Shown piece after piece: positions 1,371-45,158 of a stretch of DNA of 64,000 nucleotides. The translations under genes were made by a program, and so were the position numbers. The DNA lies in the IMG/VR virus record IMGVR_UViG_3300044641_009805, positions 214,436 to 278,435 of that record; one strand, 5' to 3'. The notes under the pieces are model-generated. The model saw only the letters and a program-made list of their open reading frames with translations, searched no databases and was not told where the DNA came from. Each line of letters starts with the position of its first letter. Position 1 is the first letter of the stretch.

Positions 1371-2030
1371 ATGCCTGCACAAAATAATAAAGTAGAGCTG
1401 ATCGGGTATTACGGATCTGATGAAACCCATGCGCTTTCAGCGTGGACATCAACATCAAGAGATCTGACTGAAGAAAAAAAGAATAGAATACCTTCCTTGT
1501 TGAAGATGTTAGCTGAGAATGAACACCATTCTGTTTTTGAAAAATCTTCAATTCATTTTCTAGTTACCAGCGATGTTGCTTCACACATACACTTAATCAA
1601 GCATAGAATCGGCGTATCAATCAATGCTGAATCAGCTAGGTACAAGGAATTGAAAGATGATAAGTACTATGTTCCTGTTGATTGGGATAATGAAGAAGCG
1701 ATTGCATACGTGATGCATATGGATCATTCTTTACAAAAATATCATGAAACTCTTGAGAGACTTGTGCGAAAAGGTATGTCACGCAAGCGTGCTAAAGAAT
1801 CTGCAAGATTGTATTTGCCTTATGGTAATCAGATCACTGCTGATGTTATGTTCAATTTTAGAAGCTTTTATCATTTTTTGAAGCTTCGGTATTCTGAGCA
1901 TGCTCAATTAGAGATAAGGAATATCGCACAACAGATGTTGGAACTTGTCGTAGCATCCAAAGCATTTCCTGCTACTCTTGAAGCTTTTGGGTTAGTCGTT
2001 AACGGTGAGATCAGAGAACCTTTTTCTTGA
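1371..2030 (+). CDS. thyX: Flavin-dependent thymidylate synthase ThyX
   Basis: HHSVFE, KHRIGVSINAESARY (ThyX motif), ESARLYLP, NFRSFYHFLKLRYSEHAQLEIR. Confidence 0.93.
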   Translation: MPAQNNKVELIGYYGSDETHALSAWTSTSRDLTEEKKNRIPSLLKMLAENEHHSVFEKSSIHFLVTSDVASHIHLIKHRIGVSINAESARYKELKDDKYYVPVDWDNEEAIAYVMHMDHSLQKYHETLERLVRKGMSRKRAKESARLYLPYGNQITADVMFNFRSFYHFLKLRYSEHAQLEIRNIAQQMLELVVASKAFPATLEAFGLVVNGEIREPFS

Positions 2031-2043
2031 AAGATTAAATCTT

Positions 2044-2625
2044 ATGTCCAAGCTAATAGTAATCGAGGGTCCTGATAGAGTTGGTAAAGCAACTCAAACA
2101 AATTTTCTTTCTAATTTTTTATCATGGAGAGGTTACAAGGTCTTAACGATTGAGGTTCCTATTCGTTCTAATTTTGTTTATCACATCATCTATTGGATGC
2201 TAAGGAATGGGCTAGCAAAAAAGTTTCCAAAATGTTTTCAGTGGTTACAGTATTTTAATAGACAGATTTTTCAATGGTTCAGCTTGAGAAAGCTGGAGAA
2301 AAATTACGATTATATCATAATGGATAGATGGAGTCTATCCACGGTCGTTTATGGTAAAGCAACAGGAGTTCCATCTGAGTTCACTGAAAAATTACATGCT
2401 AGGTTAAGAAGACCTGAGTTCACCTTTTTATTGTTGGGTCCTGCCCACAAACACTCTGCTGAAGACGTGTATGAATCTGATGCTGAGTTGCAAGAGAACG
2501 TGAGAAGAATTTACCTAGAATGGTCAAAAGAGCATCCGGCTTCTTGTAAGGTGATTGACTGCACTCAACCTCGTGAAGTCATTGCAGAAGAGATTAGAAC
2601 CAAATTGAGCGAATTAAATTTTTAA
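2044..2625 (+). CDS. tmk: Thymidylate kinase
   Basis: IEGPDRVGKAT P-loop, IMDRW motif; directly after thyX. Confidence 0.85.
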   Translation: MSKLIVIEGPDRVGKATQTNFLSNFLSWRGYKVLTIEVPIRSNFVYHIIYWMLRNGLAKKFPKCFQWLQYFNRQIFQWFSLRKLEKNYDYIIMDRWSLSTVVYGKATGVPSEFTEKLHARLRRPEFTFLLLGPAHKHSAEDVYESDAELQENVRRIYLEWSKEHPASCKVIDCTQPREVIAEEIRTKLSELNF

Positions 2626-7419: not shown

Positions 7420-7438
7420 AGTTAAAGGAGTTTCCTCC

Positions 7439-15396: not shown

Positions 15397-18300
15397 ATGA
15401 CGAGAGACAATAAAACAGCTTCACCTACCAGATTCGTGGGTCTTCATGCGCATTCTACATTTTCGCAGTACGATGGTCTCGATTATCCTCAAGAGCACAT
15501 TGATTACGTGCTAGAAAATGGCATGGACGCTTGGTCGTTGACTGACCATGGTAACATGAATGGATTCTGTCACGCTTTTCTTCATGCCGAAAAGATGAAA
15601 AAGTCAGGAAAGAACTTTAAGTTTATCCCTGGCTGCGAGATGTACGTTCATCCTGATCTTACCCAGTGGAAAAAAGATCTGGAAGCGTCCAAGGTAAAAC
15701 CTGCAAAGGACGAGTCCATCATTACTCCTATCACCGCGGTCGTTGATGGCGATGACGAGACGACAGACGTTGGTACGGATGAAGCAGCTTTGACTGTTGA
15801 GAACGAGGACGAGACGAAGTCAGGTAAATACAATGATCCCGTCAAGCGTCGTCATCATCTAGTCGTTCTACCAAAAACCTCAGTAGGCCTTCAACGTCTG
15901 TTCCACCTGGTATCCAGGGGATACATGGAAGGATTTTATCGATTCCCTCGAATCGATTATTCGATGCTAAAAGAAGCAGCAAAAGGTGATCATCTCATGA
16001 TCAGCACAGCTTGTTTAGGTGGTCCTTTGGCTTTCGACGCTTTCGAACAGCTTCAAAAAGTTCCGTTCGAAGAATTGAAACACCAATTGCTTAACGACAG
16101 ATCACTTTTGGATCGTATCATTGCTACGATGAGTAACACTTACGACAAGTTAGTTGATGCCGTCGGTCGCGATAACGTATGTCTTGAACTACAATTCAAC
16201 AAGCTCCCTGCTCAGCATCTTGTTAATCGAGCTCTCATTGAGTTTTCCAAACGAAATTCCCTGCGCGATAGAGTGGTGGTTACTTGCGACTCGCACTATT
16301 CACGACCAGAAAACTGGAAAGAACGAGAGATTTATAAGAAGCTAGGTTGGCTTAACTATCAAAACTTTGATCCAAGCTTGTTGCCTAAGTCTAAGGACGA
16401 TTTAAAATGCGAATTGTATCCCAAAAATGCCAAGCAGGTGTGGGAATCTTATTTGTCTACGACGGAAGGCATGGATTTCTATGACGATGAATTTGTTAAG
16501 GACGCGATTGAAAGAACCCATGATATCGTTCATAACGAATTAGGTGACATTCAGCCTGACAAGACAATGAAGCTTCCTTCTTACGTGATCCCTGAGGGAA
16601 CCACGGAAGATAAGGCACTCGTGGTTGCGTGTAAAAATGGATTGAAGTGGAGAGGTCTAGACTCAAGACAAGACTACATCGACAGAATCAAATATGAGCT
16701 AGGCATCATCAAAGGTAAGAAGTTCTCTAGGTACTTCTTGACGATGAAGGCTATCATGGATATTGCTCGTGAGCATATGTTGATCGGACCAGGTCGTGGA
16801 TCAGCTGCTGGTTCACTTGTAGCCTATGTTCTTGGAATTACGAATTTGGATCCAATTGAATATGATCTTTCTTTTGAAAGATTTTTGAATCCTTCTAGAA
16901 CAGGTGCCCCTGATATTGACTCTGACATCTCTGATCGAGATTTATTGATTGAACTTCTTAGAAAGAATCTTGGCGAAAGGAACGTCATTCCTATCTCCAA
17001 CTACAACACCTTCAGGTTAAAGAGCCTCATTAAAGATATTGCTCGATTCTACAGTATCCCTTTTGAGGAAGTCAACGCTGCTCTTGCTCCTGTCGAGGAT
17101 GATGTCAAGAAGGAGGTCTTTAAACCAGGAACAGACAAGAACTTGTTCGTTCTTACATACGAAGACGCCATCAAATATTCAAAGTCTCTACAAGACTTCA
17201 TTGCTGCACACCCCGAGGTGGCCGAACCAATTGAGATTTTATTCAAGCAAAACCGTTCTTTGGGCCGCCACGCCGGTGGCGTCATCGTATCAGAAGATGT
17301 CGCCGAAAGAATGCCTCTAATCCTTGCTCGCGGTGAGGCCCAGACACCTTGGGTCGAAGGCATGAACTATAAACATCTCGAAGAATTTGGGTGGATCAAG
17401 TTCGATCTGCTAGGTCTTGAAACCTTGCGTATCATCGAACGATGCATCGGCCTAATCCTCGAGCGCCGGGAAGGTGTAAAAAATCCTGATTTTAAGCAAA
17501 TTCGAGCGTGGTTTGATAAGCATATGGATCCGAAGAACATTGATCTGAACGATCAAAAAGTCTACGAATATGTTTACCACGAAGGTAGGTTCGCAGGTAT
17601 CTTCCAGCTAACACAAACAGGTGCTCAGCGGCTGTTTACGAAGGCTAAACCACGTAGCATCATCGACATTGCCACTCTTACTTCGATCTATCGTCCTGGT
17701 CCTCTTGCGGCTAACGTGGATAAACTTTATATTGATGCAAAGAATAATCCTGACAAGATTGATTATCAACATCCGTTGATCAAAAAAGTCCTCGAGTCTA
17801 CATACGGTTGTATCATCTTTCAAGAGCAGACCATGAGGTTATGTTCTGTGGTGGCGGGATTCCCTGAGGCTGAGACTGACACCATCCGTCGTAACATTAT
17901 GAAGCGCAGCGCGTCTAAGAAAGACGATGCTGCAGCGGATGCGAGGAAAGCAAAAGAAGAGTTCGTGTTAGGTGCTGTGAAGAATGGCGTAAACGAGAAG
18001 GTCGCATCTGAACTATACGATAAGATTCTATTCTTCTCTGGATACGGCTTTAATGCCTCGCATGCCGTGTCTTATGCAATTGATTCTTACTATTGCGCTT
18101 GGCTCTTGACTTATTATGAAGAGGAATGGCTATGCGCATATCTCGAATCGATGTCAGGAAACGACGAGAAACGAGCCAAAGCTTTTTCAGAAGTAAAAGC
18201 GCTAGGATATAAGATCGTTCCAATTGACGTAAACTACGCGACAAAGAGCTGGACAATCTTGGAAGGTAAACGATTCATGCCAAGCTTCTTGTCTTGCAAG

Positions 18301-18981
18301 GGAATTGGAGAGGCTGCTATCGATGAAATCGTCGAGAACAGACCTTACAAGAGTGTCGAAGAGATGTTGTGGAATGATGATGGTTCATGGAAACATTCCA
18401 AATTTAACAAGCGAGCTTTTGAAGGTCTCATCTCCATCAGAGCGTTTGACTCTCTTGACTGCGTAGGTGAAGGAAAAACATTTAACAGCTACAAACAGAT
18501 GCATCACATCTTGATTGATAAAGGTGCCGATATCAAGAAAACTTCAAAGAAAAATCCTACTCTCGGTATGGAAAACTTTCGAAATCTTTTGATAGAAACA
18601 AATGACATGGATGAGTGGACTCGTGGGGAGTTGGTTGACAACAGCGTGAAATATCTTGGATCATTCAACTCTAACATTTTAGTTTCTCAAGAACTGATTG
18701 CAAAGCTAGAATCTAAAGGTGTCAAATCCATCGACCTCATCGAGCAAACTGACGTTTATTGGTTCATTATTTCTGACGTAAAAGAAAAAAAGACGAAGAA
18801 CGGAAAGCCATACTTGCTTCTGACGGCAATAGGCCTTGAAGGCCAAACCCGTCGGATCTTTTGTTGGGGATGGGATGGCCGAACTGAGTTGCCGAAGTAC
18901 TCCACATGCATAGCAGAAATTACTGTCGATAATTACGGTAATAAAACTTTTATGAGCAAGGTTAAGGTAATCGATGAATAA
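15397..18981 (+). CDS. dnaE: DNA polymerase III alpha subunit (family C)
   Basis: PHP motifs LHAHS, TDHG, GCE; GRGSAAGS, PDIDSD, KFDLLGL, GYGFNASH; C-terminal OB fold. Confidence 0.96.
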   Translation: MTRDNKTASPTRFVGLHAHSTFSQYDGLDYPQEHIDYVLENGMDAWSLTDHGNMNGFCHAFLHAEKMKKSGKNFKFIPGCEMYVHPDLTQWKKDLEASKVKPAKDESIITPITAVVDGDDETTDVGTDEAALTVENEDETKSGKYNDPVKRRHHLVVLPKTSVGLQRLFHLVSRGYMEGFYRFPRIDYSMLKEAAKGDHLMISTACLGGPLAFDAFEQLQKVPFEELKHQLLNDRSLLDRIIATMSNTYDKLVDAVGRDNVCLELQFNKLPAQHLVNRALIEFSKRNSLRDRVVVTCDSHYSRPENWKEREIYKKLGWLNYQNFDPSLLPKSKDDLKCELYPKNAKQVWESYLSTTEGMDFYDDEFVKDAIERTHDIVHNELGDIQPDKTMKLPSYVIPEGTTEDKALVVACKNGLKWRGLDSRQDYIDRIKYELGIIKGKKFSRYFLTMKAIMDIAREHMLIGPGRGSAAGSLVAYVLGITNLDPIEYDLSFERFLNPSRTGAPDIDSDISDRDLLIELLRKNLGERNVIPISNYNTFRLKSLIKDIARFYSIPFEEVNAALAPVEDDVKKEVFKPGTDKNLFVLTYEDAIKYSKSLQDFIAAHPEVAEPIEILFKQNRSLGRHAGGVIVSEDVAERMPLILARGEAQTPWVEGMNYKHLEEFGWIKFDLLGLETLRIIERCIGLILERREGVKNPDFKQIRAWFDKHMDPKNIDLNDQKVYEYVYHEGRFAGIFQLTQTGAQRLFTKAKPRSIIDIATLTSIYRPGPLAANVDKLYIDAKNNPDKIDYQHPLIKKVLESTYGCIIFQEQTMRLCSVVAGFPEAETDTIRRNIMKRSASKKDDAAADARKAKEEFVLGAVKNGVNEKVASELYDKILFFSGYGFNASHAVSYAIDSYYCAWLLTYYEEEWLCAYLESMSGNDEKRAKAFSEVKALGYKIVPIDVNYATKSWTILEGKRFMPSFLSCKGIGEAAIDEIVENRPYKSVEEMLWNDDGSWKHSKFNKRAFEGLISIRAFDSLDCVGEGKTFNSYKQMHHILIDKGADIKKTSKKNPTLGMENFRNLLIETNDMDEWTRGELVDNSVKYLGSFNSNILVSQELIAKLESKGVKSIDLIEQTDVYWFIISDVKEKKTKNGKPYLLLTAIGLEGQTRRIFCWGWDGRTELPKYSTCIAEITVDNYGNKTFMSKVKVIDE

Positions 18982-19507
18982 CATGCATACTGTCGTAATT
19001 TTTGAAGGATGTGATAAAGTTGGTAAGACTGAAATGGCTCGTGAGCTTTCGCGACGAATGGAGATTCCATATTTCAAGAATAAATCAGAATGGAAAGCGT
19101 TTAGCTCAGATCCAGATTATTTCGTGAAGGCTCTTCGATACGGAGACCCTTACTTCTACACTTTTCTTCGAGACACCAAGACGTCTGTTATTCTTGATCG
19201 ATCGTACCCTTCAGAGTGGGTGTATTCAAGAGTTTACGATAGAAAGACCGATCATGATGCTCTGTCTCATATTGATTTTCTTGCAGCTTCTTTTGGCGTT
19301 AAGATAGTCATTCCGTATAGGACTTCTTATTCTGGTCTAAAAGACGATATTCATAACATAGGCGAATATCATCTACAAAAATTGTCAGACATGTATGAAG
19401 AATTTGCAAAGTGGACCAAATGTGACGTACTACGCTTTTGCATTGATTCTGAAAACCTAGAATGGGAAATGGAGACCATTCGTAAATTCTTGAAAAAGGA
19501 GGCATGA
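18974..19507 (+). CDS. Second dNMP kinase (thymidylate kinase-like), probably for a modified nucleotide
   Basis: FEGCDKVGKT P-loop, ILDRSYPSEWVY; coupled between dnaE and glycosyltransferase. Confidence 0.75.
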   Translation: MNNMHTVVIFEGCDKVGKTEMARELSRRMEIPYFKNKSEWKAFSSDPDYFVKALRYGDPYFYTFLRDTKTSVILDRSYPSEWVYSRVYDRKTDHDALSHIDFLAASFGVKIVIPYRTSYSGLKDDIHNIGEYHLQKLSDMYEEFAKWTKCDVLRFCIDSENLEWEMETIRKFLKKEA

Positions 19508-20532
19508 TGCGCATCGGAATTAGTTATTGGGGTTTTTGTGAGCCTTTTGGAGCATCAGGAGAAGCAAAAACGCCTGATGGTCATCGGTATGGTCGTCCTA
19601 TTTTTGTGAACGCAGCTGTCGCATCAGGACATCAGATTTATGCGTTACAAAAGCGTAGAGAAGTTGTGCCATATAAAAACATCAATTATGATGAGGGATT
19701 TCCTGACATAGATGTTTTATTTGTTGAGTGGCGATGGCCAACTTATAAAAATTCAGGAGAAAATCCTGCCGAACCTGATCTGCTCAGGCAAAATGAGCTT
19801 CTTCGGCACTATCACGGAAAGATTCCTGTCGTTATTTGGGATTGTGATTATAAGGTGACACCAGAAGATGAGCTAGCATGGCCTAAAGCTATAATTGCAG
19901 ATCCCGCATTTGAACCAAGATATTTGACCAGAAAAAGAGAAAGATTGATGTTTTGGACAGATTGGCAATTTTTGCTGCAACCGTCCAACGTGTCTTTTGA
20001 ATATGGCTATGTGGGAAACAATTATGAAAGACCAGAAGCATTTTATCAGTACTATTCCTCACCATCAAGAGAGCTAAGAAATCTGGGAATACAGACGACG
20101 GTTCATGGTAATTGGTTAGAAGTTTCTCCTGAGAGAGAACATCCTACATCATTGATAAAACAGCATCCCTTCGTTTCATTCGCTCAACGCTTGAATTTTC
20201 ATGATTCAATGAAAAGGTTGAATTCTTTTATCTGCGCAACACACATAACCAAGCCAGAATACGCCAAACGTGGGTTTGCGTCTCCTCGTTACTTAGAAAA
20301 TATGGCTGTGGGCACGCCTGCTTTGGTCCCATCAGAGTTTTTGATCCCAAACTTATTAGGAAGTGAGTGGACAGTATCGACGTCAGAACAAGTAATTGCT
20401 CAAGTTAAATACATCAGCAAACTTTCTTATGAATTCAGGGTTTCTTTAGTCAAAGAACAAATGACGATTTTGAAAAATAAGAATGTATTTTCTGTAAGCG
20501 ACGTAATAGATTTCTTGGAGACACTCGTATGA
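19504..20532 (+). CDS. GT-B glycosyltransferase resembling T4 DNA beta-glucosyltransferase
   Basis: GYVGN, VHGNW, ICATHITKPEYAKRGFASPRYLENMAVGTPALVPSEF parallels the recalled BGT C-terminal domain. Confidence 0.65.
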   Translation: MMRIGISYWGFCEPFGASGEAKTPDGHRYGRPIFVNAAVASGHQIYALQKRREVVPYKNINYDEGFPDIDVLFVEWRWPTYKNSGENPAEPDLLRQNELLRHYHGKIPVVIWDCDYKVTPEDELAWPKAIIADPAFEPRYLTRKRERLMFWTDWQFLLQPSNVSFEYGYVGNNYERPEAFYQYYSSPSRELRNLGIQTTVHGNWLEVSPEREHPTSLIKQHPFVSFAQRLNFHDSMKRLNSFICATHITKPEYAKRGFASPRYLENMAVGTPALVPSEFLIPNLLGSEWTVSTSEQVIAQVKYISKLSYEFRVSLVKEQMTILKNKNVFSVSDVIDFLETLV

Positions 20533-21530
20533 TGAAAAAAGATAAGGTTCTAATCACAGGCGTAGCTGGACTTCTTGGGGCAAATTTTTCTAGATATCTG
20601 TTGTCCAGAGGTTATGATGTCGTTGGGATTGATGATTTAAGCGGCGGATATCTAGATTCTGTTCCAAAAGAAATGACATTCTACGACGTAGACTTGGTAG
20701 ATCGTCATAAAACAGAAGAGGTATTTGCAAAAGAAAAACCTGATTATGTTTTCCATTTTGCTGCGTACGCAGCAGAAGGATTGAGTCCTTTCATTAGAAA
20801 TTACAACTACACAAACAACGTGTTAGCTTCCGCTAATGTAATTAATGCTTGTGTAAATCATGATATCAAAAAGATTGTTTTTACCTCATCGATGGCGGTA
20901 TATGGAGTAGGCAATCCACCCTTTACAGAAGATCAGCTACCAACCCCAGAGGATCCTTACGGTATTGCGAAATATGCAGTAGAGATGGATCTCAAACTTG
21001 CACATGAAATGTTTGGACTAAGATACAGCATTGTTCGCCCGCACAACGTTGTTGGCATTTATCAAAATATTTGGGATAGGTATCGAAACGTTATAGGCAT
21101 TTGGATTCGTAAAGCTCTTGTTGGAGAACCGCTGACTATCTTTGGAGACGGTACACAAAAACGTGCTTTTTCAGACATCAAGTTCTATATGGCTCCTTTT
21201 GAAAAGCTTATGACGTCTTTTGACGGTGAAACTTTCAACATAGGAGCTGATAAAGATTTCACAATTAACGAAGCTTGCGATCTCGTGATGGACGTTGCAG
21301 CTGAGCTTGGAGTTAAAGCGACCAAGGTTCATTTAGAAAAACGCAATGAAGTGCACACTGCATACTGCGATCACAGTAAAGCTCATAAGCTGTTAGGGTT
21401 TAAAGATGAAACTAATCTTAGAGATATGATTAAAGAAATGTTTGTCTGGGCTATGAAGCAGCCTGATAGACAAATAAAGAACATGGATTATGAGATTGAA
21501 AAGAACATGTACTCTTTTTGGAAGAAATGA
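20529..21530 (+). CDS. NAD-dependent NDP-sugar epimerase/dehydratase (extended SDR)
   Basis: ITGVAGLLG, HFAA, TSSMAVYG, PYGIAK (YxxxK), RPHNVVG, GDGTQKRAF. Confidence 0.92.
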   Translation: MMKKDKVLITGVAGLLGANFSRYLLSRGYDVVGIDDLSGGYLDSVPKEMTFYDVDLVDRHKTEEVFAKEKPDYVFHFAAYAAEGLSPFIRNYNYTNNVLASANVINACVNHDIKKIVFTSSMAVYGVGNPPFTEDQLPTPEDPYGIAKYAVEMDLKLAHEMFGLRYSIVRPHNVVGIYQNIWDRYRNVIGIWIRKALVGEPLTIFGDGTQKRAFSDIKFYMAPFEKLMTSFDGETFNIGADKDFTINEACDLVMDVAAELGVKATKVHLEKRNEVHTAYCDHSKAHKLLGFKDETNLRDMIKEMFVWAMKQPDRQIKNMDYEIEKNMYSFWKK

Positions 21531-22315
21531 TTATGACTTTTCCTGAAAAATTAGCTGATAGAGAAAAATACATTTTTGATCAAGTTTTAGCTGGCAATTT
21601 TGATGCAGAATGGGTTCCTCTCGAATTTTCTTCAGGAGGAAGAACCATTAAATTCAATGTGATGAATGATGCATTGAAAATTGACGGCATAAGAGTTAAT
21701 GTATCTGCAGAACTTCAGCAAAAGTTAGCAGATGTATTTAATGCGTCTTTATTGACAACACATATCGCTGACTTAATGTTTATCAATGCCACGCACCGAG
21801 TAGAGCCCTGTCCTATGACGATATCTTCGACAGTCGATTCTATGATTAAACACAGCAAAATGGTCGATGGAAAAGTTGGGTTTAATGTGACAGGATTAGT
21901 AGCTTCTCCTGGAAAGCATTGGATTTTAGATAAGAAACTAGACTTAAATCCTAGAAGAGCTTGTAACTATGGGTGGCATTTCGTTGGTACGAACTACAAG
22001 GGTATAAAAGGTCACCCAACTGGATCTAAGCAGAACAAGCTAAATGGATCGACGATGTCAGTGATCCAGCCGAATGCAACTGCCCATGATATGAAACATT
22101 CTGATTATTCTCAAATTTGTCAGCTTGTTTCTCAAGCTTGTTGGATCGACGGTGTCATACACCGTTTATCTGACGTTCTGCAAGATCCAACGAATTGTGA
22201 TCTTGCTACCGCTAATGGTCCTTTAAGTTTTGTTAGACAACCTGGTACGTCTCCTTTTGTCGGAACTTCTGTTATGTTTCCTGTAAAAATTACTTCGCAA
22301 GGAGGAATTGTATGA
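21527..22315 (+). CDS. Hypothetical protein
   Basis: Long ORF coupled by ATGA overlap; NYGWH, HSDYSQ conserved-looking blocks. Confidence 0.75.
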   Translation: MIMTFPEKLADREKYIFDQVLAGNFDAEWVPLEFSSGGRTIKFNVMNDALKIDGIRVNVSAELQQKLADVFNASLLTTHIADLMFINATHRVEPCPMTISSTVDSMIKHSKMVDGKVGFNVTGLVASPGKHWILDKKLDLNPRRACNYGWHFVGTNYKGIKGHPTGSKQNKLNGSTMSVIQPNATAHDMKHSDYSQICQLVSQACWIDGVIHRLSDVLQDPTNCDLATANGPLSFVRQPGTSPFVGTSVMFPVKITSQGGIV

Positions 22316-22500
22316 CGTATGAATACGAATGCAAAGCTTGCAATCATCAGTTTGAAGCGGAACAATCAATCAAAGATCCACCATTAACAAACTGCCCTCG
22401 TTGTAAGACTGACTTTTTAAGAAGGCTTATAAGCAAATCAACATTTGTTTTGAAGGGCTCTGGGTGGGCTGCTGATAACTATTCTTCAAAATCTTCTTAG
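22312..22500 (+). CDS. FmdB-family zinc-ribbon protein
   Basis: YEYECKACNHQFE..CPRC..RLIS..FVLKGSGW. Confidence 0.85.
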   Translation: MTYEYECKACNHQFEAEQSIKDPPLTNCPRCKTDFLRRLISKSTFVLKGSGWAADNYSSKSS

Positions 22501-23225
22501 TAAGTAGGTAGCGTGTGTTGTCTCAGCGGACAATCACTTTTGTTGCGAGATGATCTAGAAGCAGGATGCCCAGGTTTCAAGAGGTTGTGTAAGTCTTCTC
22601 CTTCTTTGCTAGCAAAGACTGATTTGACTTCGCCTGTTTCACTATTAAAGATAATAGTATACCCGCCTCTGGACATATCTAGAGGCTTTTTTATAGTGTT
22701 CATATAATCGAACCTACCTGCTTTACTCATCTCCCTATCAAACCAAGCTTCAAGCACAAAGTTAGAGACAGAAACGGGCGTGCCATTGACATCAATCTCA
22801 TACGAGTCTCCTTGAACGGGGTCGCACAATTCCAATGCTACGAAAGTATGATCTCCTCTATTCGACCAAAGATTGACGTAGGGATTGTAGAATGTTTCAA
22901 GTATTTCGTGAGATAGGACGACCGAAACAGCGTGAGTTCCCTTCAACGTAGTTCCGCCATGCTTCAATAACGGGTCCGTAAAAACTCTACACCAAACTCT
23001 TCCGTCAGGATCTTGCGTATGGTATCCAAGAGCACCAGCAACATCTGGAGAGTTAATAAGAACAACGGGGAATCCATCATTACCACCTACCTTTATCTCC
23101 CATGGCATCCTTTCCAGGAGCGGGGCTGCTTGTTGCGTTAACTGTATTTTGCAGGCTTCAACCATGAGGTTCAAATCTGCTTCGGAAACGTTGGTCGATT
23201 TATTGATGACATTAAACGTTCTCAT
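22497..23225 (-). CDS. Hypothetical protein, possible zincin-like peptidase
   Basis: GYHT, LSHEILE, ELCDPVQ..VSNFV. Confidence 0.7.
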   Translation of the reverse strand: MRTFNVINKSTNVSEADLNLMVEACKIQLTQQAAPLLERMPWEIKVGGNDGFPVVLINSPDVAGALGYHTQDPDGRVWCRVFTDPLLKHGGTTLKGTHAVSVVLSHEILETFYNPYVNLWSNRGDHTFVALELCDPVQGDSYEIDVNGTPVSVSNFVLEAWFDREMSKAGRFDYMNTIKKPLDMSRGGYTIIFNSETGEVKSVFASKEGEDLHNLLKPGHPASRSSRNKSDCPLRQHTLPTY

Positions 23226-23230
23226 AATTG

Positions 23231-23238
23231 TAAATATG
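23231..23238 (-). promoter_or_regulatory. TATANTTA-like box
   Basis: CATATTTA-N5-ATG(23225). Confidence 0.45.
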
Positions 23239-23277
23239 AAACAAGCTTGTTTATAATTTAAAAAGGTGTATAATCAT

Positions 23278-24246
23278 ATGAGAATTTTATTGACGGGTGG
23301 TGCGGGCTTCATAGGCAGTAACGTCGCAAAAAGGTTGTTGGCAGAAAATATAGAGTTTGACATCGTTGACGATCTATCGAACGGTCACATGTCGTTTGTT
23401 GATCCTTCGCTGCTGGATCGTAACATTACGATTGCCAGCTTCGACTCCGAAACAATCTTAGCAAAGATAAGGTCTGGATTGTACGATGTTGTTATACACT
23501 TGGCGGCCGTCCCGCGTGTGAGTTATTCCGTCGATTTTCCCCTTGAGTCTCACAACGCAAACGTGACAGCAACAATGAAATTGATTGATGCTTGTCGAGG
23601 AAAGATTAAACGTTTTGTCTTTGCATCCTCGTCCTCTGTTTATGGAGGTGCTGACCAGCTACCAACTCCTCCTGATACCGCAAAGAATCCTAAATCACCT
23701 TACGCTTTGCAAAAATCTATAATTGAAGATTATTTGAAGATGTATTACGATCTTTATGGGTTCGATTCAGTCAGCCTAAGGTTCTTTAACGTCTTTGGTC
23801 CAAATCAATTAGGAAATTCTCCTTATTCCACAGCGGTTTCTGCGTGGGTTAATGCAATTATGAAGGGGACTTCGATGCGTTCTGACGGAGACGGAACGCA
23901 ATCTCGCGACATGTGTTATGTTGATAATGTTGCCGATGCATGCGTAAGAGCAGCAAAGGCAAATTTCCCATTAAAGTCTGAAACTTTAAATGTGGCTTGT
24001 GGCGACAGGACAACAAATAGAGAAATTTTGCAATTTTTGTTGAAAAAATTTCCTGATGCGAAATACCATGATGCTCCTTGGAGACCTGGCGATGTCATGC
24101 ACACTCAAGCTGATATTTCTAGGACAAAAGAAGTTTTAGGTTACACTCCCCTGGTGTATTTTTGGGAAGGATTGGAAAAAACAATCCAGTGGTATCAGGA
24201 CAATTGGGAACTAATTAAAACGTTGAGTGATAAAGAGAATATATGA
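23278..24246 (+). CDS. NAD-dependent NDP-sugar 4-epimerase (WbpP/GalE-like extended SDR)
   Basis: LTGGAGFIGS, HLAA, ASSSSVYG, SPYALQK, LRFFNVFGP, GDGTQSRD. Confidence 0.92.
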   Translation: MRILLTGGAGFIGSNVAKRLLAENIEFDIVDDLSNGHMSFVDPSLLDRNITIASFDSETILAKIRSGLYDVVIHLAAVPRVSYSVDFPLESHNANVTATMKLIDACRGKIKRFVFASSSSVYGGADQLPTPPDTAKNPKSPYALQKSIIEDYLKMYYDLYGFDSVSLRFFNVFGPNQLGNSPYSTAVSAWVNAIMKGTSMRSDGDGTQSRDMCYVDNVADACVRAAKANFPLKSETLNVACGDRTTNREILQFLLKKFPDAKYHDAPWRPGDVMHTQADISRTKEVLGYTPLVYFWEGLEKTIQWYQDNWELIKTLSDKENI

Positions 24247-25241
24247 AAGTTTTTTCTAGCTTCACTGAAGCCTACTATGATCTGCTTCTAGACGTCTACA
24301 AGCATCCTGACTTTGTTTCTTCTCCTCGAGGGCAGAAGATCAGAGAAAAGTTGGGCGTATCATTCAGGATTTCTAATCCTCTTGATAGATTACCGTATGT
24401 AGAGCAAAGAGACTTTAGCTTATCATATTTTGTTGCAGAGTCTTTGTGGTATCTTTCTGGAAACGATTCCACTGAATGGATATCGAATTATTCTTCTTTT
24501 TGGAAGAACATTTCTGATGATGGCACTACAGCTAACAGCGCTTACGGCGCCAGGATTTTTAATCCTCATTCAAGAATTGCTGGTCAAATCGATCCTTCTT
24601 GGACACAATGGGATTACATCTTGAATGAACTGACGACAGATCCAGATTCTCGCCGAGCCGTCGTTCATATTAGATCTCCTCAGGATTCTATCCTAGCCTC
24701 AAAGGACGTTCCTTGCACTTTGTCTTTGCAGTTTTTTTTGCGTAACGATCAGGTTCACATGATAGTCTCTATGAGATCATCTGATCTCATCTTAGGAATT
24801 GCGTATGATGTTCCTGCATTCACGTTGTTTCAAGAGTTGTTGGCTAATCAATTATCGGATAGGCTGAACAGGTCTATAAGCGTTGGTGAGTATACTCACG
24901 TAAGCAATTCTTTGCATATTTATGAAAAGCATTTTGGAATGGTAGAAGAAATTCTAAAAAAACGAGAGTTTTTTAGTTTAGAAATGCCGAAGCTACCAAA
25001 GGGTAAACTACCTTTAGAATATATTTTGGAGCAAGAATCCAAGTGCAGAAATTGTCAGACTATTGATGAATTAAAACAGTTGGCTTCTAATCTCAATGCT
25101 GGTTCTGAATATTGGAATGATTGGTGCAAGATTTTAATTTCGCATAGAGCAAATAAGTTAAAAGGTGTTGATTCTGAAAACTTTAAGTTAGTCCTCTTGA
25201 AATCAACGGAATTTAACGGCTATAAATTTTTTAACAAATAA
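24243..25241 (+). CDS. Thymidylate synthase homolog of dCMP-modifying type (dCMP hydroxymethylase-like)
   Basis: SRRAV, DVPC (catalytic Cys), MRSSDLILGIAYD with Asp at the Asn177-equivalent site, SLHIYE; ThyX already present. Confidence 0.8.
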   Translation: MKVFSSFTEAYYDLLLDVYKHPDFVSSPRGQKIREKLGVSFRISNPLDRLPYVEQRDFSLSYFVAESLWYLSGNDSTEWISNYSSFWKNISDDGTTANSAYGARIFNPHSRIAGQIDPSWTQWDYILNELTTDPDSRRAVVHIRSPQDSILASKDVPCTLSLQFFLRNDQVHMIVSMRSSDLILGIAYDVPAFTLFQELLANQLSDRLNRSISVGEYTHVSNSLHIYEKHFGMVEEILKKREFFSLEMPKLPKGKLPLEYILEQESKCRNCQTIDELKQLASNLNAGSEYWNDWCKILISHRANKLKGVDSENFKLVLLKSTEFNGYKFFNK

Positions 25242-25247
25242 GGTGTT

Positions 25248-25811
25248 ATGTCAAATCCTCAATTCATACTCTATACGGGTCCAATGTTTTCTAGCAAAAC
25301 AACCGGACTGCTGTCTTCAATAGATCGTTTTAAATACCAAAACAAACGAGTAGCTGTGTTTAAGCCGCGCTTAGATGATAGATACAGTGAAGAGTATATT
25401 TGTACTCATAGCGGGTGGAAAGTACCTGCCATTTGCATAAAAGAAGGAACCGACATACTTGAAAAATTGTCAGAGATGAATGAAAATCCTCATGTCGTGG
25501 CTGTTGATGAAGCATTCATGATACCAGGTATTTCGAAAGTTTTAGTCTGGCTTTATAGAAGTGGATATTCGATAGTGGTATCGTCATTAGATCTATCAGC
25601 CAGCGGAAAACCGTTCAATGAAATTGAAAAAATGCTGCCTTGGGCAACCCAGGTGGAAAAACGGACGGCGGTCTGTACAGTCTGCAGCAAAGATGCTCAT
25701 TACACATACAAAAAGCAGATTGGAGGAAATGAAATAGAGGTCGGCGGAGCTGAACTTTATGAACCAAGATGTTTAAAGTGTCATCCAGTAATATTTGATC
25801 CGGCTAGCTGA
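25248..25811 (+). CDS. tdk: Thymidine kinase (type II)
   Basis: GPMFSSKT, FKPRLDDRY, VDEAF, CTVC..YEPRCLKC. Confidence 0.92.
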   Translation: MSNPQFILYTGPMFSSKTTGLLSSIDRFKYQNKRVAVFKPRLDDRYSEEYICTHSGWKVPAICIKEGTDILEKLSEMNENPHVVAVDEAFMIPGISKVLVWLYRSGYSIVVSSLDLSASGKPFNEIEKMLPWATQVEKRTAVCTVCSKDAHYTYKKQIGGNEIEVGGAELYEPRCLKCHPVIFDPAS

Positions 25812-25812
25812 A

Positions 25813-26253
25813 ATGATTGATAGGAAAAAATTAAAGCTTTCTGTTTTCATGCAAATGTGCAGGGACCTGTCTGTTCTTTCATATGATCCGAAATACAAGG
25901 TAGCTTCAATTATTATCACTCCAGACTTTAGAGAAGTTTGTGCTATCGGGTATAACGGAGGATACAAAGGCGGGCCTAACGAGAGAAGTTCTTTAGACCA
26001 CGGTAACTCAGGATTTCTCCATGCCGAAGAAAATGCTCTTTTTCATCTTTGCAAGCCTTATGAACTTCGATCTGGACTAATCATGCTATGTACTCATAAG
26101 CCTTGCTCAATGTGTGCCCGTCGCATCGTGAATAGTGGAATTCAAAATGTTGTCTATGAAGTCGATTATTTAGATAAAGAGTCTGCTACAGATGAGATAT
26201 TCAAGAATAGCAATACTTCTTGTAAAAAGTATGAAGATATAATTTCTTTATAA
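25813..26253 (+). CDS. dCMP deaminase
   Basis: GYNG, HAEENA, PCSMC zinc-deaminase motifs. Confidence 0.9.
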   Translation: MIDRKKLKLSVFMQMCRDLSVLSYDPKYKVASIIITPDFREVCAIGYNGGYKGGPNERSSLDHGNSGFLHAEENALFHLCKPYELRSGLIMLCTHKPCSMCARRIVNSGIQNVVYEVDYLDKESATDEIFKNSNTSCKKYEDIISL

Positions 26254-39205: not shown

Positions 39206-39787
39206 ATGGGTATCGGTAAGATTGAGCTGTCTAAAGCAAATTCCATTGCAAACGCTGTTCTTAGTCACATCATGCCGTCAATCGACCGCGGTGAAATTGC
39301 TGGATCTATTCGCAGGCAAAAAGACGTCGTCGGCGACATTGAGATCGTAGCCATCTCAACGCAACGAGACCGTTTGTTGTCGTTGCTGTCGGATGTCGGC
39401 CAACACATCAAACCTGGAGTTCCTGGTGCGGTTCCTTGGTCTCCAAAAGCCTCCGCAAAGTATCTTCGGGTTCGCTTACAGGAAGGCATGAATCTAGATC
39501 TTTTCATGGCATCACCAGAGAACTGGGGTGGTCTTTTTCTCATGCGAACTGGCTCAGGCGCGGGTCTTGATGGCAATTCCTTCAATGGCTTCACTCCTGG
39601 AATCTTTTCAAGATGGAAGAAGCTCTCTGGTGGTGGCCGCATGACCGACTGCATGCCGACGATGCCGACAGGCGAACAACTATGGATTCCTGAGGAAAAA
39701 GATTTCTTTGATTTGCTTGAAATGAACTTTGTGCCACCGGCAGAAAGAACCGGTCGCCAAGTCATCAAGAAATACATTCGCGGTTGA
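39206..39787 (+). CDS. Minimal DNA polymerase X (catalytic and C-terminal domains only)
   Basis: IAGSIRRQK..VGDIEIV, LDLF, GGLFLMRTGS. Confidence 0.85.
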   Translation: MGIGKIELSKANSIANAVLSHIMPSIDRGEIAGSIRRQKDVVGDIEIVAISTQRDRLLSLLSDVGQHIKPGVPGAVPWSPKASAKYLRVRLQEGMNLDLFMASPENWGGLFLMRTGSGAGLDGNSFNGFTPGIFSRWKKLSGGGRMTDCMPTMPTGEQLWIPEEKDFFDLLEMNFVPPAERTGRQVIKKYIRG

Positions 39788-39819
39788 TTTTGAAGAATTC
39801 TCGAATATTTACTACCGTC

Positions 39820-40563
39820 ATGAAAATAATCATTTTTGATTTAGACGGTACGTTGGCAGAAAGCAAATCACGAATAACATCAGGTATGGCTGATGCCTTT
39901 CGGCGTTTGCTCGCTTCTTACGATGTTGCTGTCATTTCAGGCGGCGCGTGGCCACAATTTGAATCGCAATTAGTTAATCAGCTTGGGTTGACGCCTGAAT
40001 TGTCACATCGTTTGCATTTGTTCCCAACATCGGGTACAAGTTTCTACAATAATCATGACGGAAAAAAGTGGATGCAGGTTTACTGCGAAGACCTTACAGA
40101 CAAAGAAGTAAAAAAGATCATGTCTGCCTTCAAGAAGATCCTGTCAAACCCAGGAGTAAGCATGCCCAAACGATTTTGGGGCGATCAGATCGAAAATCGT
40201 GGAACGCAAATCACATTCTCTGCCATGGGCCAGTTGGCTCCTGTAGCCGAGAAAAAGAAATGGGATCCGAATTTCTTCAAACGTCTCATTCTCATCGATC
40301 AGCTTCGGCAACTCTTGCCAGAATTTGACCTTAGAGCAGGTGGTTCCACTTCCATCGACGTGACAAGAAAAGGAATCGACAAGGCATACGGAATTTCTCA
40401 AATCGAGAAACATCTAGGGTTTTCCAAAGAAGACATGTTGTTCATTGGAGATGCGCTATTCCCGGGAGGAAATGACTATGCGGTGAAAACCACAGGAGTT
40501 CAGTGCATAGAAACCACCGGACCTGAACTCACGGCACAAATTATTGAACAATTGCTTGCATGA
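39820..40563 (+). CDS. Phosphomannomutase-like HAD-IIB phosphatase/mutase
   Basis: FDLDGTL, ISGG, IENRGTQITFS, GGSTSIDV, IDKAY, FIGD..FPGGND. Confidence 0.85.
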   Translation: MKIIIFDLDGTLAESKSRITSGMADAFRRLLASYDVAVISGGAWPQFESQLVNQLGLTPELSHRLHLFPTSGTSFYNNHDGKKWMQVYCEDLTDKEVKKIMSAFKKILSNPGVSMPKRFWGDQIENRGTQITFSAMGQLAPVAEKKKWDPNFFKRLILIDQLRQLLPEFDLRAGGSTSIDVTRKGIDKAYGISQIEKHLGFSKEDMLFIGDALFPGGNDYAVKTTGVQCIETTGPELTAQIIEQLLA

Positions 40564-45145: not shown

Positions 45146-45153
45146 TATACTTA
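45146..45153 (+). promoter_or_regulatory. TATANTTA box
   Basis: TATACTTA-N5-ATG(45159). Confidence 0.5.
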
Positions 45154-45158
45154 GTAAT

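What the first reader, a model, noticed from the sequence alone, without database searches (positions are those of the whole stretch)
18974..25241. Candidate new cytosine hypermodification system with its own sugar-nucleotide pathway
Seen, in one co-directional block after dnaE: dNMP kinase, BGT-like glycosyltransferase, NDP-sugar epimerase/dehydratase, two unknowns and FmdB, a second NDP-sugar 4-epimerase, and a TS homolog with the dCMP-type Asp; Tdk and dCMP deaminase follow. ThyX+Tmk elsewhere cover dTMP. Established: T-even phages make hm-dCMP with a TS homolog, phosphorylate it with a dedicated kinase and glycosylate DNA with alpha/beta-GTs using host UDP-glucose; arabinosylating relatives add their own sugar enzymes. 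Inference: two SDR epimerases plus a PMM (39820) imply a sugar the host pool does not supply directly (for example Gal/GalNAc-type, deoxy or pentose sugar), i.e. a glycosylated cytosine not matching glucosyl-hmC, in a DnaE-using phage outside the T-even group.
Basis: partly seen in the sequence, partly recalled or inferred. Interest (0 to 1): 0.9.

Follow-up and report, generated by a model that had tools for sequence, protein, structure and literature searches.

The report
Phage sugar-modified cytosine DNA gene cluster
An uncultured marine giant phage carries, next to its DNA polymerase gene, a conserved gene set that most likely replaces cytosine with hydroxymethylcytosine and then attaches a non-glucose sugar made by its own epimerases; this is a new variant of a known anti-restriction strategy, and its chemistry is untested.

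Summary
One "unknown" (22497-23225) lies on the minus strand. Both SDRs look like 4-epimerases, not dehydratases. The kinase is RB69 gp45/Tmk-like, not T4 gp1-like. The "PMM" is alpha-phosphoglucomutase-like.

The core is kinase + GT-B glycosyltransferase + MilA-clade thymidylate-synthase homolog + at least one SDR epimerase, beside DnaE. GT and TS stay adjacent in 41 of 44 related IMG/VR loci; the other 3 are truncated. Gene order is shuffled between them.

The TS homolog has the same residue pattern as T4 dCMP hydroxymethylase (Asp143, Asp169, Asp177, Arg126, Ser167). It lacks the D169N mark of the RB69-type 5-hydroxy-dCMP synthases. One relative carries a true T4-type gp42 instead.

SDR2 is closest to UDP-GlcNAc/GalNAc 4-epimerases and SDR1 to a promiscuous GalE. 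Some relatives carry a UDP-xylose synthase instead. The GT models as a compact GT-B, with T4 beta-glucosyltransferase giving the best TM-scores.

The 265-aa unknown, FmdB and the minus-strand gene are probably passengers.

Best reading: pre-replicative 5hmC followed by glycosylation with Gal/GalNAc-type sugar. The concept is already published (Pyle 2024; Lee 2026), so this is a new variant, not a new kind.

The parts
15397..18981 (+). DnaE-type replicative polymerase. It anchors the module, and its stop overlaps the kinase start by 8 nt.
   Evidence: Pfam DNA_pol3_alpha, finger, PHP and HHH_6. It lies adjacent to the module in nearly all related loci.
18974..19507 (+). P-loop nucleotide kinase of the RB69 gp45 / Tmk-like type. 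Inferred to convert 5hm-dCMP to 5hm-dCDP.
   Evidence: PHROG 761, 3e-11. 27% identity to RB69 gp45. The family profile scores 35.6 bits against gp45 and 2 bits against T4 gp1. Present in 42 of 44 loci.
19504..20532 (+). Compact GT-B glycosyltransferase from an unannotated family found only in phage and metagenome sequences. Inferred to be a DNA (5hmC) glycosyltransferase.
   Evidence: AF2 pLDDT 94. Foldseek hits GT4 enzymes, T4 BGT (TM 0.63-0.65) and T4 AGT. More than 250 metagenomic homologs. No relative found in the cellular genome collection. Always next to the TS homolog.
20529..21530 (+). SDR1, a GalE-like NDP-hexose 4-epimerase. It is accessory: present in only a subset of relatives.
   Evidence: Pfam Epimerase, 4.5e-49. 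Best PDB hit is T. maritima GalE 4zrm, 1e-42. S/YxxxK present, no dehydratase D-E, and Ala at the GalE Y299 gatekeeper.
21518..22315 (+). 265-aa protein of unknown function and unmatched fold. Probably a passenger and not part of the pathway.
   Evidence: No family hit. More than 315 homologs. AF2 pLDDT 92 but no PDB fold match. Found with FmdB in an unrelated neighbourhood in L053.
22312..22500 (+). FmdB-family zinc-ribbon protein, paired with the 265-aa gene. Probably a passenger.
   Evidence: Pfam Zn_ribbon_8, 2.6e-14; TIGR02605, 2.5e-18. Same pairing in L053.
22497..23225 (-). Conserved minus-strand gene (242 aa) of unknown function that interrupts the block.
   Evidence: 172 homologs. 65-67% identity in relatives L006-L013. 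No family hit.
23228..23257 (+). Sigma-70-like promoter match (TTGTAA, 18 nt, TATAAT) in the only intergenic gap, upstream of SDR2.
   Evidence: This is a consensus match only, and the overall count in the region is at chance level.
23266..24246 (+). SDR2, the core NDP-sugar 4-epimerase of the module. It is closest to UDP-GlcNAc/GalNAc 4-epimerases.
   Evidence: PDB hits 6dnt 6e-55, WbgU 4e-51, WbpP 2e-47. 'GDVMHTQAD' aligns with WbgU 'GDVRHSQAD', and Thr sits at the GalE Y299 position. An SDR2-type gene is next to the GT in most loci.
24243..25241 (+). MilA-clade thymidylate-synthase homolog. Predicted dCMP hydroxymethylase (5hm-dCMP synthase).
   Evidence: MilA 5jnh, 3e-41. Cys146, Asp143, Asp169, Asp177, Arg126 and Ser167 are invariant in 20 family members and match the T4 gp42 pattern.
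25248..25811 (+). Thymidine kinase (pyrimidine salvage, context).
   Evidence: Pfam TK, 1.6e-39.
25795..26253 (+). dCMP deaminase, which diverts dCMP to dUMP for ThyX.
   Evidence: Pfam dCMP_cyt_deam_1, 8.7e-16; PHROG 174, 2e-29.
1371..2030 (+). ThyX flavin-dependent thymidylate synthase. It makes the ThyA-like homolog unnecessary for dTMP synthesis.
   Evidence: Pfam Thy1, 3.6e-36. TIGR02170 scores 105.6 bits, above its 87.9 cut-off.
2005..2625 (+). Canonical dTMP kinase.
   Evidence: Pfam Thymidylate_kin, 2.5e-15. TIGR00041 scores 66.9 bits, below its 83.25 cut-off.
39784..40563 (+). It could feed Glc-1-P to UDP-Glc, but a link to the module is unproven.
   Evidence: PDB 4bnd alpha-phosphoglucomutase 3e-40, against PMMs at 1e-13. 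Pfam PMM and Hydrolase_3.

Best explanation
This is a pre-replicative cytosine hypermodification module.

1. The MilA-clade TS homolog (24243-25241) converts dCMP to 5-hydroxymethyl-dCMP using methylene-tetrahydrofolate. This step is supported by diagnostic residues.
2. The gp45-type kinase (18974-19507) makes the diphosphate, and a host NDP kinase makes 5hm-dCTP. This step is inferred.
3. The adjacent DnaE replicase incorporates 5hmC. This step is inferred.
4. SDR2, together with SDR1 in this clade, 4-epimerises host UDP-sugars. The most likely conversions are UDP-GlcNAc to UDP-GalNAc by SDR2 and UDP-Glc to UDP-Gal by SDR1. This is inferred from nearest characterised relatives and gatekeeper residues.
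5. The BGT-like GT-B enzyme (19504-20532) transfers that sugar onto the hydroxymethyl group of 5hmC in DNA. The result is Gal/GalNAc-type glycosyl-5hmC that shields the genome from host nucleases. This is inferred from fold and synteny.

ThyX, Tmk, Tdk and dCMP deaminase cover dTTP supply separately. The 265-aa protein, FmdB and the minus-strand gene are passengers inserted into the module in this clade.
For: TS homolog:
- The best solved relative is the CMP hydroxymethylase MilA (3e-41). T4 gp42 scores 5e-14.
- In an alignment with experimentally characterised controls, the window protein and 19 relatives all show Cys146, Asp143, Asp169, Asp177, Arg126 and Ser167.
- That is the T4 gp42 pattern. 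The controls behave as published: RB69 gp48 is E143/N169/D177, SPO1 gp29 is D143/D169/N177 and E. coli ThyA is L143/D169/N177. The criteria come from PMC13326640 and PMC5175136.
- In relative L021 the same GT + kinase module carries a T4-type gp42 (54% identity to T4 gp42) in place of the MilA-type enzyme.
- ThyX is present, so the homolog is not needed for dTMP.

Synteny:
- The GT is adjacent to TS, kinase and at least one SDR in 41-42 of 44 loci, with permuted order.
- Gene starts overlap stops from DnaE through FmdB.

Kinase: it is homologous to RB69 gp45, which sits in the kinase-GT-TS trio of known glycosyl-cytosine clusters.

GT:
- It gives a confident GT-B model. T4 BGT has the top TM-scores and T4 AGT also hits.
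- Invariant R262/E265 align with BGT R269/E272.
- No relative of the family was found in the collection of 185,579 species-representative cellular genomes.

SDRs:
- Their nearest neighbours are epimerases, and both have small gatekeeper residues.
- Relatives swap the accessory SDR for a UXS (4e-94 to human UXS1) placed directly beside the GT. This fits SDRs setting the donor sugar.

Precedent: phage GTs whose activity on 5hmC depends on a paired epimerase are published.
Against: - No chemistry is available. The acceptor of the GT, the donor sugar and the product of the TS homolog are all inferred.
- The GT has no significant sequence match to any known DNA glycosyltransferase. There is no Pfam T4-Gluco-transf or AGT hit. 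hhalign against T4 BGT gives only 16% probability, there is no match to RB69 gp47, and no PDB sequence hit.
- By E-value the top fold hits are GT4 enzymes that act on small molecules and glycans.
- Neither SDR reaches any NCBIfam equivalog cut-off, so substrates are uncertain. The role of a second epimerase with only one GT found in the window is unexplained.
- No dCTPase or MazG was found in the 64-kb window, so full replacement of C is not shown.
- The D169N and L143D/E rules rest on a limited set of tested enzymes.
Confidence: 0.62

Rival explanations
1. The pathway resembles RB69, DLP3 and RL38J1. The MilA-like TS homolog is a flavin- and O2-dependent 5-hydroxy-dCMP synthase, and the GT attaches the sugar directly to the 5-hydroxyl, giving glycosyl-5hoC with an ether link and no methylene bridge.
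For: The kinase-GT-MilA-like-TS trio next to the polymerase gene is exactly the architecture of the published 5hoC clusters. The kinase is homologous to RB69 gp45. The TS homologs of those phages also hit MilA best (Table 1 of PMC13326640).
Against: All 20 family members keep Asp169. Every tested 5hodCMP synthase has Asn there, and RB69 gp48 shows N169 in the same alignment. Trp80 and Gly173 are also kept as in ThyA and gp42, unlike RB69 gp48. Relative L021 substitutes a T4-type dCMP hydroxymethylase.
Confidence: 0.12
2. The TS homolog and kinase make plain 5hmC (or 5mC) DNA. The GT and the SDR epimerases serve something else, such as glycosylation of virion proteins or of the host envelope, and sit nearby only for co-expression as early genes.
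For: The GT's best Foldseek E-values are to enzymes that act on small molecules or glycans. It has no sequence-level match to known DNA GTs. Phage GTs that modify capsids or O-antigen are known (discussed in PMC12619734).
Against: The GT stays immediately adjacent to the TS homolog and kinase in 41-42 of 44 loci, even though gene order and the accessory SDR change. No relative of the GT family was found in the cellular genome collection scanned. T4 BGT and AGT are among its fold hits, and BGT gives the best TM-scores. The module is translationally coupled to DnaE.
Confidence: 0.1
3. The final base is ordinary glucosyl-5hmC, as in T4. The epimerases only replenish UDP-glucose, for example from UDP-galactose pools, or they act in unrelated host-takeover metabolism.
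For: 4-epimerases are reversible. An alpha-phosphoglucomutase-like gene in the window points to glucose-1-phosphate/UDP-glucose supply. The GT resembles the T4 glucosyltransferases in fold.
Against: An SDR epimerase is a near-constant neighbour of the GT, and UDP-Glc is a common bacterial metabolite that needs no epimerase. SDR2's closest relatives prefer N-acetylated substrates. Relatives that replace the accessory SDR with a UXS imply non-glucose donors. Published epimerase-paired phage GTs were inactive without their epimerase.
Confidence: 0.1

Closest known systems
T-even phage glucosyl-5hmC pathway (T4 gp42 dCMP hydroxymethylase, gp1 dNMP kinase, alpha/beta-glucosyltransferases, gp56 dCTPase)
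   Same: Pre-replicative logic, with the TS homolog and GT clustered next to the polymerase gene (T4 map). The TS homolog has the same active-site pattern as gp42: D143, D169, D177, R126, S167. The GT is a compact GT-B of the same size as BGT, with the best TM-scores (0.63-0.65) to it.
   Different: The TS belongs to the MilA clade (3e-41 to MilA, 5e-14 to gp42). The kinase is not gp1-like. There is no sequence-level membership in the BGT or AGT families. The phage encodes sugar epimerases. The replicase is DnaE, not family B. No dCTPase was found in the window.
RB69 / DLP3 / RL38J1 glycosyl-5-hydroxycytosine clusters (PMC13326640)
   Same: A Tmk-like kinase, GT and MilA-like TS homolog form a trio beside the DNA polymerase, together with phage-encoded sugar-nucleotide genes. 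The kinase is homologous.
   Different: The window TS keeps Asp169 and so is predicted to be a hydroxymethylase rather than a hydroxylase. Sugar supply is through SDR 4-epimerases, not the arabinose-5-P isomerase/kinase-uridylyltransferase/phosphatase route or a UDP-Galp mutase. The GT is not detectably related to RB69 gp47.
Metavirome C5-MT/TET 'subclass II' clusters: GT plus paired sugar epimerase (PMC8256090; bioRxiv 10.1101/2023.12.21.572611, later Cell Rep 2024)
   Same: A GT acting on 5hmC is paired with an NAD-dependent epimerase that supplies the donor. Hex, HexNAc and HexA products have been demonstrated. That survey also reports GT-B hits next to ThyS and epimerases in IMG/VR.
   Different: In those clusters 5hmC is made post-replicatively by a methyltransferase and a TET dioxygenase, at specific sites. 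Here a TS homolog and a kinase imply pre-replicative, genome-wide incorporation. This window has two epimerases and one GT. I could not test sequence relatedness to those GTs and epimerases, because their sequences were not at hand.
MilA CMP 5-hydroxymethylase of mildiomycin biosynthesis (PDB 5jnh, 5b6d)
   Same: It is the closest solved relative of the TS homolog. The two align over about 240 residues (query 3-240) within chains of similar overall length (332 aa here, 325-342 aa for MilA). Both have Asp at the base-specificity position and at the water-access position.
   Different: MilA's ribose-selecting Ala176 and Lys133 are Ser and Arg here, as in enzymes that use deoxynucleotides. The genomic context here is DNA replication, not an antibiotic cluster.

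Membership tests
ThyA-fold pyrimidine C5 transferases (Pfam PF00303) | Significant match to the family model, plus the catalytic Cys146, Glu58, Arg166, His207 and Tyr209 equivalents | tested here: met
   PF00303, 2.6e-28 and 99.4 bits against a 24.3 cut-off. All listed residues are conserved.
dCMP hydroxymethylase (functional class, T4 gp42-like activity) | Asp at ThyA N177 (cytosine). Asp or Glu at L143 (water access, hydroxymethyl product). Asp169 retained. Arg126 and Ser167 (2'-deoxy substrate). | tested here: met
   D177, D143, D169, R126 and S167 are present in the window protein and 19 relatives. Control enzymes behave as published. Activity itself was not assayed.
T4 gp42 orthologous family | Closest relationship to gp42 by sequence | tested here: not met
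   gp42 scores 5e-14 against 3e-41 for MilA. The window protein is 332 aa against 246 aa for gp42. Only relative L021 has a true gp42 ortholog.
5-hydroxy-dCMP synthases (RB69 gp48 type) | D169N substitution together with N177D | tested here: not met
   Asp169 is kept in all 20 members, and RB69 gp48 shows N169 in the same alignment.
T4 beta-glucosyltransferase family (GT63, Pfam T4-Gluco-transf) | Sequence match to the family model | tested here: not met
   No Pfam hit other than a weak Glyco_trans_1_2. hhalign against T4 BGT gives 16% probability over 82 columns.
T4 beta-glucosyltransferase family (GT63) | Compact two-domain GT-B fold with UDP-sugar-binding Arg269/Glu272 equivalents | tested here: inconclusive
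   TM 0.63-0.65 to 1c3j, 1nzd and 1qkj, the highest among PDB hits, but E-values are similar to those of GT4 enzymes. Invariant R262/E265 align with R269/E272 only in a weak profile match. The role of those BGT residues is from my recollection of the BGT literature.
DNA (5hmC) glycosyltransferase, functional class | Transfers sugar from an NDP-sugar to 5hmC in duplex DNA | not testable with these tools
   Only context is available: adjacency to the TS homolog and kinase in 41-42 of 44 loci.
T4 gp1-type dNMP kinase | Sequence similarity to gp1 | tested here: not met
   The kinase family profile scores 2.1 bits against T4 gp1. There is no PDB sequence hit, although the gp1 structures 1del and 1dek are deposited.
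RB69 gp45-type (Tmk-like) nucleotide kinase | P-loop plus similarity to gp45 and thymidylate kinases | tested here: met
   'GCDKVGKT' P-loop. 27% identity over 150 aa to gp45. Profile score 35.6 bits. PHROG 761, 3e-11.
Extended SDR NDP-sugar 4-epimerases (GalE / WbpP / WbgU) | GxxGxxG NAD motif and the Ser/Thr-Tyr-x3-Lys triad, with no Asp-Glu dehydratase pair or Glu of decarboxylases | tested here: met
   Motifs are present in SDR1 and SDR2: 'SSMAVYG' or 'SSSSVYG' rather than 'TDEVYG' or 'TSEVYG'. The nearest solved relatives are all 4-epimerases. The dehydratase motif itself is from my own knowledge of the family.
GalE equivalog (TIGR01179) / TviC equivalog | Score above the curated NCBIfam cut-off | tested here: not met
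   SDR1 scores 139.8 and SDR2 152.2 against a cut-off of 262.3. SDR2 scores 159.6 against TviC, whose cut-off is 760.
UDP-GlcNAc/GalNAc-accepting 4-epimerases (groups 2 and 3) | Small residue at the position of E. coli GalE Tyr299 | tested here: met
   SDR2 has Thr and SDR1 has Ala at that column. The SDR2 motif aligns with WbgU 'RHSQAD'. The rule itself is from my own knowledge of the literature (Ishiyama et al. 2004, recalled from memory).
Phosphomannomutase | Closest to PMMs rather than other HAD-IIB enzymes | tested here: not met
   Alpha-phosphoglucomutase 4bnd scores 3e-40 and the best PMM 1e-13.

The most novel reading that the evidence does not exclude
A widespread, uncultured lineage of marine DnaE giant phages replaces cytosine genome-wide with a glycosyl-5hmC whose sugar differs between sublineages. 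The sugar would be GalNAc/Gal-type here and xylose or L-arabinose where a UXS is present. It is set by swappable SDR cassettes and installed by a GT family seen only in phage and metagenome sequences. In this clade two epimerases would imply a mixed or two-sugar modification. None of these bases has been chemically described in a natural virion.
Probability: 0.35. Interest if true: 0.65.

Novelty: new variant of a known kind. Interest (0 to 1): 0.5.

Why it matters
If this is confirmed, glycosylated 5hmC would extend well beyond T-even coliphages. It would then occur in an environmentally abundant marine giant-phage lineage that replicates with DnaE.

It would also show a modular way of diversifying the sugar. 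The core of hydroxymethylase, kinase and GT stays the same, while the SDR cassette changes: a GalE-like or WbgU-like epimerase, or a UXS.

Such DNA resists many restriction enzymes and may bias metagenomic library preparation and nanopore base-calling, which affects how these phages are counted.

The GT and the epimerases would be candidate reagents for labelling 5hmC with non-glucose sugars. The value is incremental, because the principle is already published.

Tried and rejected
- **UXS + UXE idea.** I first thought the two SDRs might be UDP-GlcA decarboxylase plus UDP-xylose 4-epimerase, giving UDP-Ara. I rejected this for the window: neither SDR has the 'TSEVYG'/'YDEGKR' signature, and UXS structures are only weak hits. 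It does apply to relatives L018, L019 and L034.
- **Near-identical or related isolated phage.** Megablast of the block and tblastn of the GT against 50,697 phage records found nothing. DnaE reaches at most about 30% identity. The kinase gives only marginal hits to T4-like phages.
- **Sequence link from the GT to known DNA GTs.** A PDB profile search returned only spurious hits. There was no match to RB69 gp47.
- **The 265-aa protein as a second GT or sugar enzyme.** It has no family, PDB sequence or fold match, and it occurs away from the module in L053. I treat it as a passenger.
- **A second GT or a dCTPase in the window.** Pfam, PHROG and NCBIfam scans of most of the larger ORFs found none.
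- **Host clue from cellular genomes.** The scan found no relative of the GT.
- **The 'moraphage' paper (PMC12619734).** I checked whether it describes this lineage. It does not mention these genes.
- **Promoter and terminator scan.** Counts were at chance level.

Full report
**1. What is in the sequence**

The region lies in a long run of plus-strand genes. The ORFs are as follows.

| Coordinates | Strand | Size | Identity |
|---|---|---|---|
| 15397-18981 | + | 1194 aa | DnaE |
| 18974-19507 | + | 177 aa | P-loop kinase |
| 19504-20532 | + | 342 aa | Glycosyltransferase (GT) |
| 20529-21530 | + | 333 aa | SDR1 |
| 21518-22315 | + | 265 aa | Unknown |
| 22312-22500 | + | 62 aa | FmdB zinc ribbon |
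| 22497-23225 | - | 242 aa | Unknown |
| 23266-24246 | + | 326 aa | SDR2 |
| 24243-25241 | + | 332 aa | TS homolog |
| 25248-25811 | + | 187 aa | Tdk |
| 25795-26253 | + | 152 aa | dCMP deaminase |

- Pfam, PHROG and NCBIfam confirm DnaE, both SDRs, FmdB, the TS homolog, Tdk and the deaminase.
- ThyX (1371-2030, above its NCBIfam cut-off) and Tmk (2005-2625) lie upstream.
- From DnaE to FmdB each start overlaps the previous stop by 4-13 nt. The only intergenic gap (40 nt) precedes SDR2 and holds a TTGTAA-18-TATAAT match.
That gene is real: it has 172 database homologs and is 65-67% identical in diverged relatives.

**2. Where it comes from**

- No isolated phage is close.
- The block is 100% identical to an IMG/VR viral contig of 278 kb and 99% identical to another of 213 kb.
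- The GT has more than 250 metagenomic homologs, several from Tara Oceans samples, on contigs of 190-290 kb.
- The window also encodes part of a ribonucleotide reductase, a GMP reductase/IMPDH-family enzyme, a phage lysozyme and other phage-typical genes.
- It is an uncultured aquatic, probably marine (Tara Oceans relatives), giant phage that uses a DnaE replicase.

**3. The conserved unit**

I fetched 44 IMG/VR loci encoding GT relatives (28-100% identity) and mapped window proteins onto their ORFs.

- The TS homolog is next to the GT in 41 loci. The three exceptions end before it could appear.
- The kinase is present in 42 loci and an SDR in 41. DnaE is almost always adjacent.
- Gene order is permuted: kinase-GT-SDR-TS-SDR, GT-kinase-TS-SDR, and TS...GT-kinase-SDR. 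Many loci are near-duplicates, so the number of independent lineages is nearer twenty.
- SDR2-type genes are near-universal. SDR1-type genes occur only in some lineages.
- The 265-aa gene, FmdB and the minus-strand gene accompany the module only in the closest clade (L004-L015).
- In a more distant phage the 265-aa/FmdB pair sits elsewhere, beside a lysozyme gene. I therefore treat these three genes as passengers.
- The core is kinase + GT + TS homolog + at least one SDR epimerase.

**4. The TS homolog**

- Its best solved relative is MilA, the CMP 5-hydroxymethylase (3e-41). T4 gp42 and ThyA score 1e-12 to 1e-15.
- Published diagnostic positions, in E. coli ThyA numbering, are these:
  - N177D selects cytosine.
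  - L143D/E correlates with a hydroxymethyl product.
  - D169N marks the flavin/O2-dependent 5-hydroxy-dCMP synthases of RB69, DLP3 and RL38J1 (PMC13326640).
  - MilA's Ala176 and Lys133, in place of Ser167 and Arg126, select ribo-CMP (PMC5175136).
- I aligned the window protein and 19 relatives with E. coli ThyA, T4 gp42, RB69 gp48 and SPO1 gp29, all taken from annotated records.
- The controls reproduce the published patterns.
- The window family is invariant: Cys146, Asp143, Asp169, Asp177, Arg126, Ser167, His207 and Tyr209. This is the T4 gp42 pattern.
- In relative L021 the module holds a gp42 ortholog (54% identity to T4 gp42) in place of the MilA-type enzyme. That is a natural substitution pointing to the same product.
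- With ThyX present, I conclude that the homolog is a dCMP hydroxymethylase.

**5. The kinase**

- It has a P-loop and matches the PHROG thymidylate-kinase family.
- It is 27% identical to RB69 gp45.
- A profile of 19 family members scores 35.6 bits on gp45, 16 bits on the window's own Tmk and 2 bits on T4 gp1.
- It is therefore the gp45-type kinase that sits in the kinase-GT-TS trio of the RB69, DLP3 and RL38J1 clusters, not a gp1-type dNMP kinase.
- Its substrate is inferred.

**6. The glycosyltransferase**

- Sequence methods say little. There is a weak Glyco_trans_1_2 hit, no PHROG or NCBIfam hit and no PDB sequence hit.
- With a 45-sequence alignment, AlphaFold2 gives a confident model (pLDDT 94, pTM 0.90) of a compact GT-B.
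- Foldseek against the PDB returns GT4-type enzymes (tll1591, BH4 glucosyltransferase, BshA, SenB) and T4 beta-glucosyltransferase at E of about 1e-10 to 1e-11.
- BGT has the highest TM-scores (0.63-0.65). T4 alpha-glucosyltransferase also hits (0.60).
- A weak profile match to BGT (16% probability) places the family's invariant Arg262 and Glu265 on BGT Arg269 and Glu272.
- BFVD hits include the Bacillus phage SP-15 GTs and a cyanophage 'DNA alpha-GT'.
- A scan of 185,579 species-representative cellular genomes found no relative.
- 'BGT-like' is fair as a description of the fold and unproven as family membership.

**7. The epimerases and the sugar**

- Both SDRs have the NAD motif and the Ser-Tyr-Lys triad. 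Both lack the acidic residues of 4,6-dehydratases and decarboxylases (the motif rule is from my own knowledge of the family).
- SDR1 is closest to the Thermotoga maritima GalE (1e-42).
- SDR2 is closest to a set of UDP-GlcNAc/GalNAc 4-epimerases: 6dnt, WbgU and WbpP, at 1e-47 to 1e-55. Its 'GDVMHTQAD' aligns with WbgU 'GDVRHSQAD'.
- At the E. coli GalE Tyr299 gatekeeper, SDR2 has Thr and SDR1 has Ala. Small residues there are associated with acceptance of N-acetylated substrates; this rule is recalled from the literature.
- Neither SDR passes an equivalog cut-off.
- My best guess is UDP-GlcNAc to UDP-GalNAc for SDR2 and UDP-Glc to UDP-Gal for SDR1. UDP-GlcNAc is available in any bacterium.
- Relatives L018, L019 and L034 carry a bona fide UDP-glucuronate decarboxylase instead of SDR1 (4e-94 to human UXS1). 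In L034 it sits directly upstream of the GT. This supports the view that the SDR cassette sets the donor sugar and that the lineage is glycodiverse.
- The distant 'PMM' is alpha-phosphoglucomutase-like. It could feed UDP-Glc, but nothing links it to the module.

**8. Comparison with what is known**

- The logic is that of T4: hydroxymethylase, kinase and GTs next to the polymerase gene.
- The kinase-GT-MilA-like-TS trio plus phage sugar-nucleotide genes is the published RB69, DLP3 and RL38J1 architecture.
- GTs that need a paired epimerase to put Hex, HexNAc or HexA on 5hmC are published for MT/TET clusters. That study's metagenome mining already noted GT-B hits beside ThyS and epimerases.
- Four things are new here:
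  - the combination of a pre-replicative MilA-clade hydroxymethylase with an epimerase-supplied sugar;
  - an unannotated GT family;
  - the DnaE giant-phage host lineage;
  - two epimerases with one GT.
- I rate it a new variant of a known kind.

**9. Open points**

- No dCTPase was found in the window, so the extent of cytosine replacement is unknown.
- The reason for two epimerases is unknown.
- The 265-aa protein has a confident model (pLDDT 92) with no structural match in the PDB, and it has invariant Cys, His and Asp residues. It is unexplained.

Noticed in passing
window 21518-22315 (+), with 22312-22500: The 265-aa protein gives a confident AlphaFold model (pLDDT 92, pTM 0.89) but has no Foldseek match in the PDB (best E 0.23) and no family hit. 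Invariant Cys149/His154/His190/His194/Asp196/Cys201 suggest an enzyme or a metal site. It travels as a pair with an FmdB zinc-ribbon gene in other phages (L053).
   Followed up: partly
L018:3109-4131, L019:7397-8389, L034:9018-10004: Relatives carry a bona fide UDP-glucuronate decarboxylase (UXS; 4e-94 to human UXS1) beside the same GT/kinase/TS module, where the window has the GalE-like SDR1. This implies a pentose (xylose or L-arabinose) donor in those lineages.
   Followed up: partly
L021:12818-13468: One relative has a T4-type gp42 dCMP hydroxymethylase (54% identity to T4 gp42) in the module, in place of the MilA-clade enzyme.
   Followed up: yes
L006-L013, e.g. L007:6334-7269: In several relatives DnaE is split into two ORFs by a roughly 0.9-kb insert. 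The insert encodes a 311-aa protein with a weak phage endonuclease I match (1.6e-05), so it looks like a homing-endonuclease or intron-type insertion. The window's DnaE is intact.
   Followed up: partly
window 37212-38456 (+): A full-length isocitrate lyase scores 749 bits, above the 562-bit cut-off of the NCBIfam equivalog. A glyoxylate-shunt gene is unusual in a phage.
   Followed up: no
window 5547-6314 (+) and 7382-7969 (+): A beta-class (CcrM/N6_N4-type) adenine DNA methyltransferase lies near an HNH endonuclease gene. This would be a second, independent DNA modification in the same genome.
   Followed up: no
window 13784-14851, 26657-27385, 30760-31521, 34535-34954, 44148-44648 (-), 45099-46031: There are further auxiliary genes: a GMP reductase/IMPDH-family enzyme, an Fe/Mn superoxide-dismutase-like protein, a nitrilase-family CN hydrolase, a NUDIX hydrolase, an HhH-GPD DNA glycosylase and an FGE-sulfatase-domain protein. 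The NUDIX enzyme is the only candidate seen for dCTP clearance.
   Followed up: no
window 22665-22695 (+): A strong hairpin followed by a T-run (9-bp stem with 5 GC pairs) lies 165 nt after the FmdB stop, inside the convergent minus-strand gene. It could terminate the DnaE-to-FmdB transcript.
   Followed up: no
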